From Octopus sinensis (taxonomy: Eukaryota), in the NCBI RefSeq assembly GCF_006345805.1, contig NC_043015.1:36952001-37016000 (forward strand): a stretch of DNA of 64,000 nucleotides. Direction: 5' to 3'. A program made the translations under genes and the position numbers. The first letter of the stretch is position 1. Each line of letters starts with the position of its first letter. Positions 2,296-55,925 of this stretch are shown here, piece by piece. The notes beneath the pieces are model-generated. The model searched no databases and was not told where the DNA came from. It worked only from the letters and a program-made list of their open reading frames with translations.

Positions 2296-2351
2296 TTATA
2301 TATATATTATATAGATATATATATATATATATATATCTATAGATATATATA

Positions 2352-2812
2352 ATATGGCGTGTACTGGTACACCGGCGATATAATTAATTTTATTGTATCG
2401 CATTTATCTTTGTTTACATATTCTCTCGATAAATTTCTGACCGTTAGACGATATACCACAATCCCCTATTTGTCGGGTTTGTTCTGAGTCTGCGCAATGT
2501 TTTGAATAGTTTAGAAAGAGCATTTCGATAGACGCACATGGGTCTATTGATATGGTCTTCCCATCATTAACAGGAATCTTACTGAAGAGCCAGCCTGAGT
2601 AAATAAATACTATTTTTATTACTGAATTTGGCGAAACTGCAGTATAAGAAAAGTTAAGTTTGTAAAAGTTTTTAATTTCATCTCACTAAATTTATCCAGC
2701 TATTGTGTATCTAGTGCACTCTTCGCCTTGAATGTAATGATATAGTATAATATATGGCGTGTACTGGTACACCGGCGATTATAATTATTTTATGTATGCA
2801 TTTATCTTTGTT

Positions 2813-2814
<2 letters not shown>
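2352..2814 (+). mobile_element. Retrozyme-like / non-autonomous PLE-derived element: 400-bp unit plus ~63-bp terminal direct repeat, central HHR
   Basis: ATATGGCGTGTACTGGTACACCGGCGAT...CATTTATCTTTGTTTA occurs at 2352-2416 and 2752-2814 (period 400). Both flanks are (TA)n, no ORF, HHR at 2577-2649. Confidence 0.7.
2577..2649 (+). ncRNA. Type I hammerhead ribozyme (family A), canonical core
   Basis: TCTTA(2577-81) CTGAAGA(2582-88) GCCA(2589-92)...TGGC(2629-32) GAAA(2633-36) CTGCAG(2637-42, palindrome) TA(2643-44) TAAGA(2645-49). Stem I 5 bp, stem II 4 bp plus a long inner hairpin, all core nucleotides present; predicted cleavage after GUA at 2644. Confidence 0.85.
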
Positions 2815-2878
<64 letters not shown>

Positions 2879-6689: not shown

Positions 6690-7050
6690 TAAGTCACTTA
6701 AAAAAAACTCTCGATCCAATAATACTGTTTACAAACTCTTTGATTGGAATGACCAATTTTAAATACTATTGGAACGTACTCACAATGTACAGGAATCTAT
6801 ATATATATATATATATATATATATCATTCAGCCTAAATAATAGATTCAATATCCCTGCATATCTCACGTCTATTTTCATTCCACCACTTGATTCTCTATT
6901 TCATATCTTATCTAGAATAACTATTGCTTAACCATTTTCTCACAGCGTCTCTGATGAAGCGATATATAAAATATCTCGGAAACAGCTGTAAGACCTATTT
7001 ATAAATGTTCTGAAATCTTTCACACCCTTGGATTTTTATCTCATTCTGTT
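6690..7050 (+). mobile_element. Penelope-like element 3' end (GIY-YIG C-terminus remnant plus pLTR)
   Basis: Frameshifted KLFDWND..., ..SLNNRFNIPAYL resembles the PLE endonuclease C-terminus (FDW..IL...R..E...N). It is followed directly by an HHR at 6947-6994. Confidence 0.55.
6947..6994 (+). ncRNA. Type I hammerhead ribozyme (family C)
   Basis: GTCT CTGATGA A GCGATAT-ATAAA-ATATCTC G GAAA CAGCTG TA AGAC. Stem I GTCT/AGAC, stem II 6 of 8 positions paired, palindromic CAGCTG; cleavage predicted after 6990. Confidence 0.75.
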
Positions 7051-7053
7051 AAT

Positions 7054-7119
<66 letters not shown>

Positions 7120-7944: not shown

Positions 7945-8090
7945 GGCAAAAAAAGCCTGGAAATTTTGCGGGGGGAGAATAGTCAATTAGCTCAGACCCA
8001 GTAACTCACTGGTGACTATTTTATCGACCCCGAAAGGATTTAATGCAAAGTCAACCTCGGTGGAATTTCAAATCAGAACGTAAAGACGGA
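7945..8090 (-). mobile_element. tRNA-derived SINE fragment
   Basis: Reverse complement gives TACGTTCTGATTTGAAATTCCACCGAGGTTGACTTTGCAT..CCTTTCGGGGTCGATAAAATAGTCACCAGT, the same family as 32130 and 49560. Confidence 0.75.
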
Positions 8091-8327
8091 TGAAACACTG
8101 TTAAGTATTCCTGAATGATACTGATTCTGTCTGCAGACCGCCTTATTTCAGCTAATGGTAATAATAATTTAGGTACAACGCGAGCTCTTTTAGAGGAAGG
8201 CGAATACTCGATTACAACAAAACTGGTATTTGATTGGTACTTTATTTTAGCAAACCCGCATGGAAAAAGGTAAATTGACATCGGCGATATTTGAATTGAG
8301 ACGAGAGACAGACAAAATGCCTGGGAT

Positions 8328-8427
8328 NNNNNNNNNNNNNNNNNNNNNNNNNNNNNNNNNNNNNNNNNNNNNNNNNNNNNNNNNNNNNNNNNNNNNNNNN
8401 NNNNNNNNNNNNNNNNNNNNNNNNNNN
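8328..8427. other. Assembly gap (100 N)
   Basis: Run of N. Confidence 1.
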
Positions 8428-13499: not shown

Positions 13500-13912
13500 G
13501 TTTCAGGTATTTGACTGCGGTCATGCTGGAGTACCGACTTTAGTAGAAGAAATCGACCCCAGAACTTATTCTTTGTAAGCTTAGTACTTATACTATCAGC
13601 TCTTTTGCCGAACCGCTAGGTTACGGGGGACGTAAACAACCAACGTGGGTTCTCAAGCGATGGTGGGGTGAAAACACAGACACACAAACATATGCATGTA
13701 CATATATATATTATATATAATATATATATATATCTATATATATATATATATGACAGGCTTCTTTCAGTTTCCGTCTACCATATTCACTCACAGGCTTCGG
13801 TCGACCTGTGGCTATAGCAGAAGACATTTGTCCAAGGAGCCACGCAGTAGGACTAAACCCGAAACCATGTGGTTGATAAGAAAAGCTATTTACCATACAG
13901 CCACTCCGGCAC
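13500..13912 (-). mobile_element. tRNA-derived SINE with internal (TA)/(CA) microsatellite
   Basis: Head GGAGTGGCTGTATGGTAAATAGCT...GACGGAAACTGAAAGAAGCC, then a microsatellite, then tail ...CCAGCATGACCGCAGTCAAAT. Other copies at 26642-26800, 33040-33432, 36660-37028, 44115-44280 and 48470-48720. Confidence 0.85.
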
Positions 13913-17019: not shown

Positions 17020-17666
17020 CCTAACTCATGATAACTGCTGTGTTCATCACTTTATGCCAGAGATAAAATGGCAGTCCATATAGTGAAAAAACACACTCAA
17101 CTTTCTTCATAGAAGGCTAAGTTCGTTTCATCTCCAGGGAAAGTTTTGGCCTCAGATTAATTATTTTTATGCAAATAGCATTGAGCATAGTGAGTCTCTC
17201 CAAAGGGGACACACGATCAATGGAGAATACTATACCAACTTGCTGATACAATTATTGAAAGCTATGAAGAACAACCGCCCAGGAAATCTGATTAATGGAG
17301 ACTTGATTCATCAGGCCAATATTCCAGCACTCAGGACATTGGTTTTAATGGATAGTGTGCGTCGATATGAACTGGTGGATTTCTCCCCATATTCGCCTGA
17401 TTCGGTTCCGTCTATCATTTGTTCCCCAAGACGAAAAATCATTTGACTGGGAACCAATATCGAAATAATGATGACGACACGTCTGCAGTTGATGAGTGTT
17501 TCCAACAACAGGAGGAAAACTTCTTCAACAATTGAGTCCAGGGACTGCAACACCGATGGAAGAATTTTGTGGGGCGCAAAGAGAACTATGTTGGAAAATA
17601 AACCTCATTTGGTCACATTCCATTGGAGTATCTTGGTCAGCCCATAAACTTTTAAACTAACCTTCA
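17020..17666 (+). mobile_element. mariner transposase 3' remnant with right TIR
   Basis: VHHFMPE, GHTINGEYYTNLL, PYSPDSVPS (YSPDLAP motif). TIR CAGCCCATAAACTTTTAAACTAACCTTC at 17638-17666. Confidence 0.85.
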
Positions 17667-26582: not shown

Positions 26583-26629
<47 letters not shown>

Positions 26630-26641
26630 ATGTATATATTT

Positions 26642-26800
26642 AGGTGCAGGATGGCTGTGTGGTAAGTAGCTTGCTTACCAACCACATGGCTCCGGGTTCA
26701 GTCCCACTGCCTTGGGCAAGTGTCTTCTACTATAGCCTCGGTCCGACCAAAGTCTTGTGAGGAGATTTGGGAGAGACGGAAACTGAAAGAAGCCCGTCGT
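26642..26800 (+). mobile_element. tRNA-derived SINE head
   Basis: GGTGCAGGATGGCTGTGTGGTAAGTAGCTTGCT...GGGTTCAGTCCC...GAAAGAAGCCCGTCGTATATA. Confidence 0.85.
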
Positions 26801-26809
26801 ATATATATA

Positions 26810-26849
<40 letters not shown>

Positions 26850-27046
26850 TATATAATATGGAAAGAGGAGGTGCTGAGTGGGGACATTAGGTCCCTTGTT
26901 CGAGATATAAAAACATAGATGTGCGTCGGTAGCCACCTGGAAAAGATGTTTTCATCGGATAAAAAAAAAGGCAGTAACCTTGTCCTAATCAGGACTACCA
27001 CTTTACGTTGGCAAATAGATTTTACTGTCTCTCCCTCTCTCTCTAT

Positions 27047-27079
<33 letters not shown>

Positions 27080-27202
27080 ATTTCAGTAAAACAATTAAGA
27101 TTCAAGTGAGTTCCAATGAATTCACATGAATGTGGTACCTAACTTAGATGCACCAGAAATCTTTATGGTATTAACCATAAAATAAAGTGGGGTGATTATA
27201 AA

Positions 27203-27671
27203 CAAGAAAAAAGCAACAAGAATGGATTAGTTGTTCAGTACAATTGTTTCATACGAAAAACATATTTATTAAAAGCTGCAAATATTGCAGCAAATACAAG
27301 TGTCCCATATTCATCAGCCAAAACACATATGAGTTTTCCAAACATCCTAGGGGTTGAGGCTACACTCATGAAGTATCGACAAGAGTTCTATGAAAAGCAA
27401 AGTTAGATTGTAAGCAGACTTAAAATGTTTTCTAATGATGCACAGTTTTATATAAGGTTTTTAAAAAAGATCGTTAGCTTCACAGGAAAGGTAAATCCAT
27501 CCATAATAATGCAGGTGTAATTTCCCCAGGATGTTTTGAAAACTCATATGTGTTTTGGCTGATGAATACGGAAACTTGTATTTACTGCAATATTTGCAGT
27601 TTTTAATAAATCTGTTCTTCGTATGAAACAATTGTACTGAACAACTAATCCATTCTTGTTGCTTTTTTTCT

Positions 27672-27673
<2 letters not shown>
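27203..27673. mobile_element. MITE/foldback element with ~150-bp terminal inverted repeats
   Basis: 27203-27353 is the reverse complement of 27524-27673 (about 90% identity by eye), with a ~170-bp spacer. TA on the right flank. Confidence 0.85.
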
Positions 27674-27729
<56 letters not shown>

Positions 27730-32019: not shown

Positions 32020-32129
32020 TCCTGATCGTCGAGTTTGATCAGTCAATGATTATTGGAGATCATGTTACACGTTGTAACCACTGACAGATGTGTCTAATAC
32101 CTTTGTTGCTCTGACGAAAAGCGAAACTT

Positions 32130-32262
32130 TTCCCCTCACGACCCCGAAAGGATGAAAGGCAAAGTCGACCTCGGCGGAATTTGAACTCAGAACGTAGCGG
32201 CAGGCGAAATACCGCTAAGCATTTCGCCCGGCGTGCTACCGTGTCTGCCAGCTCGCCGCCTT
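32130..32262 (-). mobile_element. tRNA-derived SINE head (young copy)
   Basis: Reverse complement gives GGCGGCGAGCTGGCAGACACGGTAGCACGCCGGGCGAAATGCTTAGCGG...GAGTTCAAATTCCGCCGAGGTCGACTTTGCC. Confidence 0.9.
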
Positions 32263-32723: not shown

Positions 32724-33039
32724 CACACATATATGTGTGCAAGTATGTGTGTGTGTGTGTGTGTGTATTCGAGTTATATTTGATTTATATTCTCATAATT
32801 AGTAATAATTCATGCTAAAGCGTGAATTGTATAGTGGCGGACATCTTATTTCCGTCCATTTAAATATCGAACAAACTGTATATCACACGCCGGTTATTAT
32901 AATTCTTTGATCGTGTATTATCCGCTTTGTGTCATCTATACAAGCTGTGGACAGACTCGCTGCTTACCATCTTCCTCTACCAACATCTTTTCGCGTGGCA
33001 CTTTTACAGTGCATTCTTTTTTTCTTTTACTTTTCTCAG

Positions 33040-33240
33040 GAATCTGACTGCGGCCACGCTGGAGCACCGCCTTCAATCGAACTAATTCACCTCAGAACTT
33101 ATTCTTTGTAAGCCTAGTACTTATTCTATTGGTCTTTTCGCCGAACCGCTATGGTACGGGAACGTAAACACACCAACATCATCCGTCAAGCGATGGTGGG
33201 GGTACAAAGACACACAAACATATACATACGCACACACACA

Positions 33241-33273
<33 letters not shown>

Positions 33274-33432
33274 TGATATATGTTTCTGTCTACCGAATCC
33301 ACGAATCCACTCACAACGCTTCGGTCGGCCCGAGGCTTTAGTAGAAGACATTTGCCCAAGCTGCCATGCAGTTGGACTTAAACCGGAAGCATGTGCTTGG
33401 GATCCAAGCTTCTTACCACACAGCGACGCCTG
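33040..33432 (-). mobile_element. tRNA-derived SINE with internal (CA)n
   Basis: Same head-microsatellite-tail layout as 13500-13912. Confidence 0.85.
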
Positions 33433-47768: not shown

Positions 47769-47854
47769 CAATTGTAAGCGTCTAAGAACCATGAAGAGAA
47801 TCAGGTTCTCATAAGAACCTGATTCTCTTCATGGTTCTTAGACGCTTACAATTG
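47769..47854. repeat. Perfect 41-bp inverted repeat with 4-nt loop
   Basis: 47769-47809 is the exact reverse complement of 47814-47854; loop CATA. Preceded by a 33-bp tandem duplication (47720-52 / 47753-85). Confidence 0.95.
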
Positions 47855-48469: not shown

Positions 48470-48720
48470 TAGAGGTAAACAAAGGCAATAACACCGGTTG
48501 TTAAGCGCTGGTGGTGGACAAGCGCAGACACAAAGACACACACACATAGAAATGTATACACACATTCTCATATGTGCACGATAGGTTTCTTCAAGTTTAC
48601 GTCTAACAAATCCACACACAAGGCCTTGGTCGGCCCGAGATTATAGTAGAAGACGTTTGCGGAAAGTGCTGCGCAGTGGAACTGAACCCAGAACCATGTG
48701 GTTGGGAATCAGGCCTGCGA
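48470..48720 (-). mobile_element. tRNA-derived SINE (13500 family)
   Basis: Reverse-complement head CCAACCACATGGTTCTGGGTTCAGTTCCACTGCGCAGCAC...GGGCCGACCAAGGCCTTGTG. Confidence 0.8.
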
Positions 48721-48749
48721 CTATATGTATATATATATGTATATATATT

Positions 48750-48820
<71 letters not shown>

Positions 48821-52719: not shown

Positions 52720-53014
52720 GCGTACACACACATAAACGTGTTTGTTTAAATTGGCATTTTACCGTAGGGCCCCTCTGTACTTCATGTGAAACTACATTTA
52801 TGTTCTGTAATATTGTTGATGTTGTTGTATAAGTACTCATGATAACCAATAATTATATGAGACGAAGTCATACAACCTTTAAAAAAACAATTCAAAAACT
52901 GATTATAAAATTAAACATAATTATAATGGAAACAATACTTATTGGTTTACCGTTGTTACTTCTCTCTCATTTTCTGTTGCTTCCCATATGTATATATATG
53001 TATATATATATATA

Positions 53015-53109
<95 letters not shown>

Positions 53110-53207
53110 GTATATATATAATAAATATTACATTATATAAAAGGGCTTAGTAAAAATAATACTTTGCCACATACTGAACTCATTTCCCAATCCGAATCAA
53201 GGAGTTC

Positions 53208-53259
53208 TGAGCTGACGAAAGAAATGTCGATTTGACTAATCTAGAAACGTACGTTCTCA
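53208..53259 (+). ncRNA. Type I hammerhead ribozyme (family D, copy 1)
   Basis: TGAG CTGACGA A AGAAATGTC-GATTT-GACTAATCT A GAAA CGTACG TT CTCA. Stem I TGAG/CTCA, perfect palindrome ACGTACGT; cleavage predicted after GUU at 53255. Confidence 0.75.
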
Positions 53260-53777
53260 AATAACCTTTGCACTTGTGAGTTTTTTAATGTTTTTACCCC
53301 CATACTTTCGTGAGTTGGTTTGAGCAAACACTATCTGAGAGAGATTTTCTTTAAGTATTAGAAATAGCTAAAAAAAAAAAAAAATTTTTTTAGCTGCTAT
53401 TTCTAATGAGTTCAGTATGTGGCAAAGTAATTTATTTTACTAAGCCCTTTTATATAATGTAATATTTTGAATTCGCCTTAAATGGTCCCTTTACATACTG
53501 AATACTTGGTGAAATTGATTAATAATTAATTAATTTTACCCTCAATTGTTGAAATTATAATTCATTTCTCTCTGTTTAATGCTTCGGTTTTTCACCGATA
53601 AAACATAGTGTGTTTTCAATTTTAACCCACGCTGGTGGAAGGGGGAGAGCAGAAATTCTTCGCTTGCATATTTTGAATTTGGTAACACTGATAGTTCGAG
53701 CGGATGTCCAGTGGTGATAGGAAGCCAAAAGGGTATGCTCCCACTTTCAGTGTTCCCAAATCCGAATCAAGGAGTTC

Positions 53778-53829
53778 TGAGCTGACGAAAGAAATGTCGA
53801 TTTGACTAATCTAGAAACGTACGTTCTCA
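53778..53829 (+). ncRNA. Type I hammerhead ribozyme (family D, copy 2)
   Basis: Identical to 53208-53259, 570 nt downstream; cleavage predicted after 53825. Confidence 0.75.
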
Positions 53830-54124
53830 AATAACCTTTGCACTTGTGAGTTTTTTAATGTTTTTACCCCCATACTTTCGTGAGTTGGTTTGAGCAAACA
53901 CTATCTGAGAGAGATTTTCTTAAGTATTAGAAATAGTTAAAAAAAAAAAAAAAAAAATTTTTTTAGCTGCTATTTCTAATGAGTTCAGTATGTGGCAAAA
54001 GTAATTTATTTTACTAAGCCCTTTTATATAATGTAATATTTGAATTCGCCTTAAATGGTCCCTTACATACTGAATACTTGGTGAAATTGATTAATAATTA
54101 ATTAATTTACCCTCAATTGTTGAA

Positions 54125-54156
<32 letters not shown>

Positions 54157-54159
54157 CAC

Positions 54160-54217
<58 letters not shown>

Positions 54218-55067: not shown

Positions 55068-55098
55068 TACTTTATTTGTAAGCAGCAGAAAATCAACA

Positions 55099-55144
55099 AA
55101 ATCTGTTACTCTGAGTTTCTCGTTGCCGTTCATCAGACAGTTTT
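55099..55144 (-). ncRNA. Type I hammerhead ribozyme (family E, inverted copy)
   Basis: Reverse complement gives AAAACTGT CTGATGA A CG-GCAA-CG A GAAA CTCAGAG TA ACAGATTT. Confidence 0.75.
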
Positions 55145-55711
55145 TGTATGTATACTGGCCTCTATAGATGCCAATAACATCGCTACAAGTTTCCCCCCCC
55201 ACCCCTCTTTCGTTCCTTTTTCTCTCTTTCCCTTTCTTTCGTTCCCCCTCCTCGCTCAGTATATGAGAATTGCTACATAGATGAATTTAGCTTGCGTGCG
55301 AGACGGTTTGCGTGAATATATGTACACATGCTTTTATGTGTATAATTTAGATTCATATTCATACGTCTGTATATGTATGTATGGCGTTTACGCGCATCCT
55401 TTTGTGTATGTTGATATATATATGTGGATTTTAATATAAATATGTATTGCAGTATTTATAACAGGTTTAATTTCTATGCATTAATTTGTACTGTCTTCAT
55501 TAACGGCAATAGGTTTTTTTTCCTCGGATTTATAATTTTTATAATTTTTATAAGTTTTTTATATATATATACATAATTTTTGACCTTTTTGTTTATCGCT
55601 CGAAGATTGACCGTTTTTTCTAAAGGGCCAATCAAACAAGTCCAGTTCTTTTTAAAGGTGTAGCGTTTGTAAGAGTATAGATTGAATTAATATATATGTT
55701 CCATTCTAGCA

Positions 55712-55757
55712 AAAACTGTCTGATGAACGGCAACGAGAAACTCAGAGTAACAGATTT
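55712..55757 (+). ncRNA. Type I hammerhead ribozyme (family E)
   Basis: AAAACTGT CTGATGA A CG-GCAA-CG A GAAA CTCAGAG TA ACAGATTT. Stem I 7 of 8 bp, GNRA-capped 2-bp stem II, near-palindromic ACTCAGAGT; cleavage predicted after 55749. Confidence 0.75.
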
Positions 55758-55858
55758 GTTGAATTTTCTGCTGCTTAAAATAAAGCATATATTACTTACC
55801 ACTGGTATTTGAGTACTCTTTTTCCACCTTGTTTCACATTTATGTGTGTTACTCCGGT

Positions 55859-55925
<67 letters not shown>

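What the first reader, a model, noticed from the sequence alone, without database searches (positions are those of the whole stretch)
53124..54126. Double-hammerhead 570-nt tandem: candidate cephalopod non-LTR retrozyme able to release a unit-length (circularisable) RNA
Seen: two identical type I HHR motifs exactly 570 nt apart (53208-59 and 53778-829) inside ~370-bp near-identical direct repeats, no ORF, inserted in (TA)n. Known: non-LTR retrozymes, i.e. HHR-bearing tandem repeats yielding small circRNAs and thought to use PLE machinery, are reported in some metazoans (axolotl, coral, mussel; de la Pena lab, recalled from memory). I do not recall an octopus example. Inference: read-through transcription would self-cleave after 53255 and 53825, giving a 570-nt monomer (53256-53825), longer than the typical 150-400-nt units. 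Two cis copies with an ACGUACGU palindromic stem III suit dimeric cleavage. Near-identity suggests recent activity.
Basis: partly seen in the sequence, partly recalled or inferred. Interest (0 to 1): 0.92.

Follow-up and report, generated by a model that had tools for sequence, protein, structure and literature searches.

The report
Hammerhead-bearing Penelope-type mini retroelement, partial tandem
This is a small non-coding mobile element carrying two copies of a minimal hammerhead ribozyme motif, of the kind already known from Penelope-like retroelements and animal "retrozymes"; it is a real and tidy example, but an ordinary one.

Summary
Two identical 52-nt type I hammerhead (HHR) motifs lie exactly 570 nt apart (cleavage sites after 53255 and 53825). 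They sit inside direct repeats of 372 and 374 bp that differ by one substitution and seven homopolymer-length indels. There is no coding capacity, and (TA)n lies on both sides.

The locus is not a tandem array. It is a 1.65-unit partial tandem with a 62-nt inverted fragment at its upstream end and an 85-nt "tail" at the other end, inserted in (TA)n. That is the published insertion signature of Penelope-like elements (PLEs).

The HHR is the minimal PLE-type variant: helix I of 4 bp, an extra A after A9, a long helix II and a palindromic ACGUACGU helix III. Rfam hammerhead models do not detect it. Four other unrelated small elements in the same 64 kb carry the same kind of HHR and also abut (TA)n: 9 motifs are seen against 0.1–0.3 expected by chance.

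Release of a 570-nt RNA is structurally plausible but unproven, and PLE-type HHRs cleave poorly in vitro. A 570-nt unit is within the published range (51–972 bp), and hammerheads are already annotated in a cephalopod genome. The taxon could not be verified. Verdict: new member of a known kind, modest interest.

The parts
52970..53122 (.). Left flank: (TA)n-rich microsatellite, the presumed insertion target
   Evidence: Sequence. The element's left end lies 4 nt from a (TA)>=5 run.
53123..53184 (-). Inverted 62-nt fragment, the reverse complement of unit segment 53405-53467 / 53978-54041. Read as an inverted, 5'-truncated copy at the upstream end of the insertion.
   Evidence: blastn 94-95% identity; sequences compared. 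It shows about 3 differences in 62 nt, so it is more diverged than the direct repeats are from each other.
53184..53555 (+). Direct repeat copy 1 (372 nt), pseudo-LTR-like
53208..53259 (+). Minimal type I hammerhead, copy 1. Helix I is 53208-11:53256-59. The core CUGACGA is 53212-18, followed by an extra A at 53219. Helix II spans 53220-42 (AGA:UCU, a 3x3 loop, GUC:GAC, loop GAUUU), with A53243 unpaired. GAAA is 53244-47. The palindrome ACGUACGU is 53247-54, U17 is 53255, and the predicted cleavage is after 53255.
   Evidence: Read directly from the sequence; descriptor hit. Rfam is negative.
53357..53407 (+). Internal hairpin ATTAGAAATAGCT-A15-T7-AGCTGCTATTTCTAAT. It recurs in copy 2 with A19.
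   Evidence: it is paired in the MFE fold.
53556..53752 (+). Single-copy part of the 570-nt unit. It includes a hairpin at 53672-53766 that reaches into the start of repeat copy 2.
   Evidence: (the hairpin was picked up as a chance miRNA-like fold).
53753..54126 (+). Direct repeat copy 2 (374 nt)
53778..53829 (+). Minimal type I hammerhead, copy 2, identical to copy 1. Predicted cleavage is after 53825.
53256..53825 (+). Predicted 570-nt unit RNA between the two cleavage sites. Its ends are held together by an 11-bp interrupted helix I (53256-68 : 53769-81).
   Evidence: MFE -152.9 kcal/mol, z = -5.9 against 100 shuffles; pair table and circular fold of -149.0 kcal/mol.
54042..54126 (+). 85-nt 'tail': sequence lying beyond the point (54041) where the inverted copy's homology ends. 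It equals the first 85 nt of the next unit (53468-53555).
   Evidence: Compare the PLE 'tail' described in PMC8557442 and PMC11167929.
54127..54440 (.). Right flank: (TA)n-rich microsatellite
   Evidence: distance 0 to a (TA)>=5 run.

Best explanation
The locus is a single, young insertion of a small non-coding retroelement that depends on a Penelope-like element (PLE) for its movement. In current usage that makes it a retrozyme-like, non-autonomous PLE derivative.

**Inferred mechanism**
1. An RNA of this family, either a multimer or a circle, was copied by a PLE reverse transcriptase/GIY-YIG endonuclease at a nicked (TA)n microsatellite.
2. Reverse transcription started internally at AU-rich sites and ran for more than one unit. 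This gave the 1.65-unit partial tandem with pseudo-LTRs of about 373 bp.
3. Priming from the second nicked strand, or a template switch, gave the 62-nt inverted fragment at the upstream end.

Each pseudo-LTR carries a minimal type I hammerhead. If the locus is transcribed through both copies, the two can pair through the ACGUACGU palindrome into a double hammerhead and cut after 53255 and 53825. That would free a 570-nt RNA whose ends are held together by helix I, so a tRNA ligase of the RtcB type could circularise it.

**Shown here:** the sequence architecture, the complete HHR core, foldability, and recurrence of the same HHR type and (TA)n targeting in other elements of the window.

**Inferred only:** transcription, cleavage, circularisation, and mobilisation by a PLE.
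For: **Hammerhead motif**
- The core and type I topology are complete, read directly from the sequence.
- HHR motifs are enriched: 8 descriptor hits against 0.12 expected, and 5 against 0.28 with a second descriptor.
- Five independent, sequence-unrelated elements in the window share the class: A 2342-2819, B 6826-7054, F 27080-27668, C 55068-55860, and this one. In each, the HHR lies 30-300 nt from the element's 3' end. Each has a short helix I and a self-complementary helix III (a perfect 8-nt palindrome except in C), and four of the five cores are followed by an A after A9.

**Insertion architecture**
- All 10 outer ends lie within 8 nt of a (TA)>=5 run. Only 10% of random positions lie within 12 nt of one.
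- Element A is also a partial tandem, a 397-nt unit plus 81 nt of its own start.
- Elements C and F have inverted HHR-bearing arms with an extra tail at one end.
- These features match published PLE descriptions: partial tandems forming pLTRs, an inverted 5'-truncated copy upstream, a tail at one end, and microsatellite/(TA)n targets (PMC8557442).
- They also match min-HHRs in pLTRs, and dual HHRs 100-700 bp apart on opposite strands (PMC4209133).
- A purified PLE protein nicks and extends both strands and initiates internally (PMC11167929).
- Retrozymes have been derived phylogenetically from PLE pLTRs (bioRxiv 10.64898/2026.07.22.740005).

**Non-coding, and folds well**
- No coding capacity.
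- The monomer fold has z = -5.9.
- Helix I appears spontaneously in the MFE and extends to 11 bp. Forcing the double-hammerhead fold on the 651-nt two-HHR transcript costs only +0.8 kcal/mol.
Against: - No second copy of this family could be found, either in the window or in any reachable collection. Mobility and family-level conservation or covariation of this particular HHR are therefore untested.
- No PLE ORF (RT or GIY-YIG) was found in the window, and none could be linked to the element.
- Rfam hammerhead models do not score the motif at E<=10. They also miss the cleaner motifs of elements A and F, so this negative result is weak.
- The G10.1-C11.1 pair, reported as highly conserved even in PLE min-HHRs (PMC4209133), is replaced here by an A.A mismatch followed by A-U.
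- The tail is 85 nt here, against 30-40 nt in described PLEs.
- The inverted fragment is more diverged (about 5%) than the direct repeats (0.3% substitutions). It may therefore stem from a separate template or an older event.
- PLE-type HHRs cleave poorly in vitro. For the anole PLE, no reads ended at the HHR site (PMC4209133, PMC11167929).
Confidence: 0.72

Rival explanations
1. The element is the same (a PLE-type non-autonomous insertion), but the hammerhead is catalytically inert or nearly so at this locus. Under this reading the double HHR is only a by-product of partial-tandem insertion, and no unit-length or circular RNA is made. Any role of the motif would be something other than self-cleavage, for example recognition by the PLE protein.
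For: - The closing pair of helix II is an A.A mismatch instead of G10.1-C11.1, and the cleavage triplet is GUU rather than GUC or GUA.
- There is no Rfam score.
- Min-HHRs show low in vitro activity (PMC4209133).
- HHR cleavage was not needed for PLE insertion in vitro, and no RNA-seq reads ended at the cut site (PMC11167929).
- Naiad PLEs proliferate without HHRs (PMC8557442).
Against: - The full core is intact in both copies, and in 7 further motifs of unrelated elements in the window. That argues for selection on the motif.
- The double-hammerhead fold is energetically accessible.
- Dimeric constructs of comparable HHRs do cleave (PMC4209133, PMC7229834).
Confidence: 0.4
2. The element is a foldback/MITE-type DNA transposon that targets TA dinucleotides (Tc1/mariner-dependent). 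Under this reading the hammerhead-like motif is fortuitous.
For: - There is a 62-nt inverted repeat, 53123-53184 against 53405-53467.
- The flanks are TA-rich.
- A mariner transposase fragment lies elsewhere in the window, at 17087-17443.
Against: - The right-hand arm of the inverted repeat is internal, not terminal. About 660 nt of element sequence lie beyond it.
- The second repeat copy has no left arm.
- HHR motifs are enriched roughly 20-60-fold over chance and occur in four other (TA)n-embedded elements.
- Partial tandems are not a MITE feature.
Confidence: 0.05
3. The 570-bp duplication is an assembly or sequencing artefact, or a local replication-slippage duplication. Under this reading the real locus has one repeat and one HHR.
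For: - The copies differ almost only by homopolymer lengths, which is the typical long-read error profile.
- The window is a scaffold with a 100-N gap at 8328-8427.
- The locus lies in a highly repetitive (TA)n tract.
Against: - One true substitution distinguishes the copies.
- Element A shows the same partial-tandem pattern independently.
- Partial tandems are the rule for PLE-type insertions (PMC8557442, PMC11167929).
Confidence: 0.08

Closest known systems
Minimal hammerhead ribozymes in the pseudo-LTRs of Penelope-like elements (Cervera & de la Pena 2014, PMC4209133; PLE architecture in Craig et al. 2021, PMC8557442)
   Same: - Type I topology with helix I of 4-5 bp.
- An extra nucleotide after A9, and a long helix II.
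- A palindromic helix III that implies dimeric action.
- The HHR lies in each of two direct flanking repeats, near the 3' end.
- Partial-tandem insertion with an inverted truncated copy upstream and a tail at one end.
- Microsatellite/(TA)n target.
   Different: - No RT/GIY-YIG ORF lies between the repeats, only 197 nt.
- The G10.1-C11.1 pair is replaced by A.A plus A-U.
- The tail is 85 nt rather than 30-40 nt.
- Relatedness to any actual PLE pLTR could not be tested.
Metazoan non-LTR retrozymes (Cervera & de la Pena 2020, PMC7229834; Li, Clavereau & Pollet 2026, bioRxiv 10.64898/2026.07.22.740005)
   Same: - A non-coding, AT-rich repeat with a type I HHR in each unit.
- Two HHRs in cis delimit a unit-length RNA.
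- The unit is strongly self-paired.
- PLEs are the proposed helpers.
- The unit length is within the published 51-972 bp range.
   Different: - Retrozymes with demonstrated circRNAs carry canonical type I HHRs with loop 1-loop 2 contacts and occur as arrays, from dimers up to hundreds of units.
- This locus has only 1.65 units and a minimal PLE-type HHR.
- Expression and circles are not shown.
Schistosoma Sm-alpha and newt satellite 2 hammerhead repeats (named from the reviewer's own knowledge, and as cited in PMC4209133 and PMC7229834)
   Same: - Short non-coding, SINE- or satellite-like repeats carrying a type I HHR.
- A weak, palindromic helix III that favours double-hammerhead cleavage of multimeric transcripts.
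   Different: - Those are high-copy families with canonical helix I and II sizes that Rfam Hammerhead_1 detects.
- This motif is not detected by Rfam, and its copy number is unknown.

Membership tests
Hammerhead ribozyme, type I | Conserved core C3-U4-G5-A6-N7-G8-A9, G12-A13-A14, A15.1-U16.1, and H17 not G | tested here: met
   CUGACGA at 53212-18, GAAA at 53244-47, U53254 and U53255. The second copy is identical at +570.
Hammerhead ribozyme, type I | Three helices around the core, with helix I open (type I order) | tested here: met
   - Helix I is UGAG:CUCA, extendable to 11 bp.
- Helix II is AGA:UCU plus GUC:GAC.
- Helix III is A-CG/UA/CG-U, a palindrome.
Hammerhead ribozyme, type I | G10.1-C11.1 closing pair of helix II | tested here: not met
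   A53219 and A53243 face each other, and the first Watson-Crick pair is A53220-U53242. Element C shows the same A.A arrangement, and element B shows A.G or two unpaired 5' nucleotides.
Hammerhead ribozyme, type I | Match to curated covariance models (Rfam Hammerhead_1, HH9, HH10 and others) | tested here: not met
   There is no hit at gathering score or at E<=10 on 53000-54200. The models also miss the HHRs of elements F and A, so the test is insensitive to this class.
Hammerhead ribozyme, type I | Core conservation and helix covariation among homologous copies | not testable with these tools
   No homologous copy could be reached. Only non-homologous elements in the window keep the same helices with different sequences.
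Hammerhead ribozyme, type I | Site-specific self-cleavage | not testable with these tools
   This needs an in vitro transcription assay.
PLE-type minimal HHR (Cervera & de la Pena 2014) | Short helix I (4-5 bp), unpaired nucleotide between A9 and 10.1, enlarged helix II, and palindromic 15.2-16.2/loop 3 | tested here: met
   The motif has a 4-bp helix I, an extra A at 53219, a 25-nt helix II and the ACGUACGU palindrome. The criteria are taken from PMC4209133.
Penelope-like element (autonomous) | Single ORF with RT and GIY-YIG endonuclease | tested here: not met
   The longest stop-free frame is 74 codons. There is no significant Pfam hit and no protein homologue.
Penelope-like element insertion architecture (applies equally to non-autonomous derivatives) | Partial tandem forming pseudo-LTRs, inverted 5'-truncated copy at the upstream end, tail at one end, and microsatellite target | tested here: met
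   - 1.65 units with repeats of 372 and 374 bp.
- An inverted 62-nt fragment at 53123-53184.
- An 85-nt tail at 54042-54126.
- (TA)n at both ends.
- The tail is longer than the published 30-40 bp.
Penelope-like element derivative | Sequence relatedness of the unit to the pLTR of an autonomous PLE in the same genome | not testable with these tools
   No eukaryotic genome or repeat library is reachable, and no PLE remnant was identified in the window.
Metazoan non-LTR retrozyme | Tandem repeat units each carrying a type I HHR (dimer or longer), non-coding, low GC | tested here: met
   There are two HHRs 570 nt apart in 1.65 units, no ORF, and GC of 32-34%. It qualifies only as a minimal 'dimer'.
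Metazoan non-LTR retrozyme | Canonical type I HHR with helix I/II sizes and loop 1-loop 2 tertiary contacts (criterion used in PMC7229834) | tested here: inconclusive
   The helix sizes are of the minimal, PLE-like type. A C bulge and an internal loop in helix I face an internal loop in helix II, but no conserved contact nucleotides can be recognised from one sequence.
Metazoan non-LTR retrozyme | Expression as unit-length linear and circular RNA | not testable with these tools
   No transcriptome data are reachable.

The most novel reading that the evidence does not exclude
This may be an active, lineage-specific family of (TA)n-targeting hammerhead mini-retroelements. On this reading its members occur at very high density in this genome: 9 HHR motifs at 5 loci in 64 kb, roughly one per 7 kb if the window is representative. 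They would use a non-canonical purine-purine closure of helix II, and this locus would produce a 570-nt circular RNA through double-hammerhead cleavage.
Probability: 0.15. Interest if true: 0.55.

Novelty: new member of a known kind. Interest (0 to 1): 0.3.

Why it matters
If confirmed, this would be a clean cephalopod-type example linking three features in one 1-kb locus:
- minimal hammerheads;
- PLE-style insertion scars (partial tandem, inverted fragment, tail);
- microsatellite targeting.

Such a locus is convenient for testing whether PLE-type HHRs really process transcripts into unit-length or circular RNAs. The wider point is the density of such elements in the window. It hints that they may be a substantial, probably under-annotated repeat class in this genome, since Rfam models miss them. 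It also hints that (TA)n tracts act as traps for them. None of this changes current concepts; it extends a known class to another host.

Tried and rejected
**Searches that returned nothing useful**
- Rfam at gathering score on the whole window gave no hammerhead.
- Rfam at E<=10 gave no hammerhead on the locus or on elements F and A.
- The whole-window E-value scan was swamped by microsatellite-driven miRNA false positives. Only its 150 best rows are listed, so it could not be checked for hammerhead hits.
- Exact-product look-ups of two element ORFs found nothing on record.
- A 596-aa concatenation of all stop-free frames of the element, searched against the 5.8-billion-protein database in the hope of catching ORFs called on other copies, gave no hits.
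- DNA pattern scans of the metagenome and viral contig collections gave no hits.
- An attempt to identify the organism from a mariner transposase fragment found no candidates.
- Tandem Repeats Finder reported nothing, because the 570-nt period exceeds its 500-nt limit.
- ARAGORN found no tRNA, so there is no sign of a tRNA-derived SINE.

**Readings considered and rejected**
- A MITE/foldback reading was rejected because the right inverted-repeat arm is internal.
- RNAcofold of isolated HHR segments was uninformative, because it simply predicts fully swapped duplexes.

Full report
**1. What is in the sequence**

The region 53123-54126 is a 1-kb island of complex sequence inside a long (TA)n-rich microsatellite tract. 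It contains two direct repeats, 53184-53555 and 53753-54126. In a pairwise alignment they differ by one substitution and seven homopolymer-length indels.

Each repeat carries the same 52-nt motif, at 53208-53259 and 53778-53829, exactly 570 nt apart: UGAG / CUGACGA / A-AGA-AAU-GUC-GAUUU-GAC-UAA-UCU-A / GAAA / CGUACG / U / U | CUCA. This is a complete hammerhead core (C3-A9, G12-A14, A15.1-U16.1, H17 = U) in type I order.

There is no coding capacity. The longest stop-free frame is 74 codons, with no significant Pfam hit. A 596-aa concatenation of all frames has no homologue.

**2.

- 53123-53184 is the reverse complement of 53405-53467 and 53978-54041, at 94-95% identity.
- The repeat is a partial tandem of 1.65 units, not an array. 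Tandem Repeats Finder is silent only because its period limit is 500.
- The unit contains a hairpin, ATTAGAAATAGCT-A15-T7-AGCTGCTATTTCTAAT, at 53357-53407.
- The inverted fragment's homology stops at a point corresponding to 54041, whereas the direct copy runs 85 nt further, to 54126.

The layout is therefore: (TA)n, then an inverted 62-nt fragment, then 1.65 direct units (pseudo-LTR, 197 nt, pseudo-LTR) including an 85-nt tail, then (TA)n.

**3. Is the hammerhead more than chance?**

Rfam says nothing. There is no hammerhead at gathering score or at E<=10 on the locus.

I wrote a descriptor requiring the core, helix I of at least 4 bp and a self-complementary helix III, with helix II unconstrained. 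It gives 0.12 hits per Markov-shuffled window and 8 hits in the real one. A second descriptor, with a strict palindrome and helix II up to 60 nt, gives 5 hits against 0.28 expected and adds another locus.

Besides the two copies here, the convincing hits are:

| Element | HHR position(s) |
|---|---|
| A | 2577-2649 (+) |
| B | 6947-6994 (+) |
| F | 27322-27234 (-) and 27554-27641 (+) |
| C | 55140-55103 (-) and 55716-55753 (+) |

A further hit at 32111-32172 is weak and probably chance.

These elements share no sequence with each other or with the locus. All keep a 4-5-bp helix I and a helix II hairpin. All have a self-complementary helix III: ACUGCAGU, ACAGCUGU, ACAAUUGU and ACGUACGU, plus the near-palindrome ACUCAGAGU in C. 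Four of the five have an A after A9.

Rfam also misses the cleaner HHRs of F and A at E<=10. The Rfam negative therefore reflects model insensitivity to this class rather than absence of a hammerhead. One defining feature is not met here: the G10.1-C11.1 pair. A53219 and A53243 face each other, and the same A.A is seen in element C.

**4. What the element is**

All five elements are non-coding and sit in (TA)n. All 10 outer ends lie within 8 nt of a (TA)>=5 run, against 10% of random positions within 12 nt.

- Element A is also a partial tandem: a 397-nt unit plus 81 nt of its own start, at 90% identity.
- Elements C and F consist of two inverted HHR-bearing arms with their 3' ends pointing outward. 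One end is extended by about 70-120 nt.

The literature on Penelope-like elements describes these same features:

- Partial tandems forming pseudo-LTRs, an inverted 5'-truncated copy next to the upstream pLTR, an extension ('tail') at one end, and an insertion bias for microsatellites including (TA)n (PMC8557442).
- Minimal HHRs in both flanking repeats, and dual HHRs 100-700 bp apart on opposite strands (PMC4209133).
- A purified PLE protein that nicks and extends both DNA strands and starts reverse transcription internally, which explains the tail (PMC11167929).

A 2026 preprint derives animal non-LTR retrozymes phylogenetically from PLE pLTRs (10.64898/2026.07.22.740005).

The best reading is therefore a young insertion of a non-autonomous, PLE-dependent, HHR-bearing retroelement. 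The double hammerhead follows from the more-than-unit-length copying that this insertion mode produces.

**5. Could it release a unit-length RNA?**

Structurally, yes.

- The 570-nt monomer folds at -152.9 kcal/mol against -117.7 +/- 6 for shuffles, z = -5.9.
- In that unconstrained fold, the 5' end (53256-68) pairs with 53769-81. This is helix I of the hammerhead, extended to 11 bp with a C bulge and a small internal loop, so the two ends are juxtaposed.
- On a 651-nt transcript spanning both HHRs, enforcing the nested double-hammerhead fold costs only +0.8 kcal/mol relative to the MFE. That fold comprises the 8-bp intermolecular-type helix III 53247-54:53817-24, both helices I and both helices II.

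Against activity:

- The A.A closure of helix II and the GUU triplet.
- The low in vitro activity of PLE-type min-HHRs (PMC4209133).
- The lack of cleavage-site reads for the anole PLE (PMC11167929).

I put the chance that this locus yields a 570-nt circular RNA in vivo at roughly 0.3.

**6. Comparison with what is known, and novelty**

[quoted passage not shown] This motif belongs to the latter group.
- The 570-nt unit is not exceptional. Published consensus lengths span 51-972 bp, with a mean of 650 bp in ray-finned fishes (10.64898/2026.07.22.740005).
- Retrozymes and PLE HHRs are already described in molluscs (the mussel, PMC7229834).
- 235 Hammerhead_1 loci are annotated in the giant squid genome (PMC6962438).
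- Penelope elements are among the abundant, partly octopus-expanded repeats of coleoids (PMC8967140).

I found no paper describing this particular kind of element in an octopus. I also could not verify that the window is cephalopod at all. The finding is a new member of a known kind.

**7. Limits**

- No other copy of this family was reachable: none in the window, none in the metagenome or viral contig collections, and none through protein-word tricks.
- Copy number, family-level covariation and the identity of the helper PLE therefore remain open.
- An assembly artefact cannot be excluded, because the copies differ mostly at homopolymers and the window contains an N gap at 8328-8427. The independent partial tandem in element A argues against it.

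Noticed in passing
window 2342-2819: Element A is a non-coding 397-nt unit followed by an 81-nt repeat of its own start (90% identity), with (TA)n on both sides. It carries one minimal type I hammerhead at 2577-2649 with a canonical G10.1-C11.1 pair, a 45-nt helix II and the palindrome ACUGCAGU. The predicted cut is after 2644.
   Followed up: partly
window 6826-7054: Element B is a 229-nt non-coding insert between two (TA)n runs. It carries one minimal hammerhead at 6947-6994 with the palindrome ACAGCUGU. It is probably a 5'-truncated copy of another family.
   Followed up: partly
window 27080-27668: Element F has two inverted arms of about 157 nt (27197-27352 and 27524-27679, 93% identity). 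Each carries a minimal hammerhead (27322-27234 on the minus strand, 27554-27641 on the plus strand, palindrome ACAAUUGU). About 120 nt of extra sequence lie at the left end, and (TA)n lies at both outer ends. The two arms differ in helix II by a C-G to U.G change that keeps the pair.
   Followed up: partly
window 55068-55860: Element C lies only about 940 bp downstream of the finding, in the same (TA)n tract. It has two inverted arms of about 80 nt with identical minimal hammerheads (55140-55103 minus, 55716-55753 plus). Helix II is A.A + CG + a GCAA loop. The right arm has a tail of about 70 nt.
   Followed up: partly
whole window: Minimal hammerheads are very dense: 9 convincing motifs at 5 loci in 64 kb. 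Rfam detects none of the four loci rescanned at E<=10. If the window is typical, this repeat class would be very large and under-annotated in the source genome. (TA)n runs are also extremely frequent: 196 runs of (TA)>=5.
   Followed up: partly
window 32111-32172: A weak hammerhead-like descriptor hit (CUGACGA ... GAAA ...) with a poor helix III, partly overlapping an interspersed repeat shared with 8025-8109. It is probably chance.
   Followed up: no
window 17087-17443 (+): A fragment of a mariner-type transposase (Pfam PF01359 Transposase_1, E = 2.7e-5). It has no intact ORF, and no homologue was retrievable from the protein database.
   Followed up: partly
window 47769-47854: An 86-nt near-perfect palindrome, 97.7% self-complementary. 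It could form a long hairpin. Its nature is unknown.
   Followed up: no
window 13503-13907, 26619-26855, 33036-33430, 48570-48803: Copies of an interspersed repeat family at 73-80% identity, on both strands. They are possibly SINE-like but were not characterised. ARAGORN finds no tRNA-like sequence in the window.
   Followed up: no
window 8328-8427: A run of 100 N, which is a scaffold gap. The window therefore comes from a scaffolded assembly.
   Followed up: no
window 53123-53184 against 53405-53467: The inverted fragment of the finding is about 5% diverged from the unit, whereas the two direct repeats differ by 0.3% in substitutions. It may have been copied from a different template molecule, or it may be the remnant of an earlier insertion at the same (TA)n site.
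   Followed up: partly
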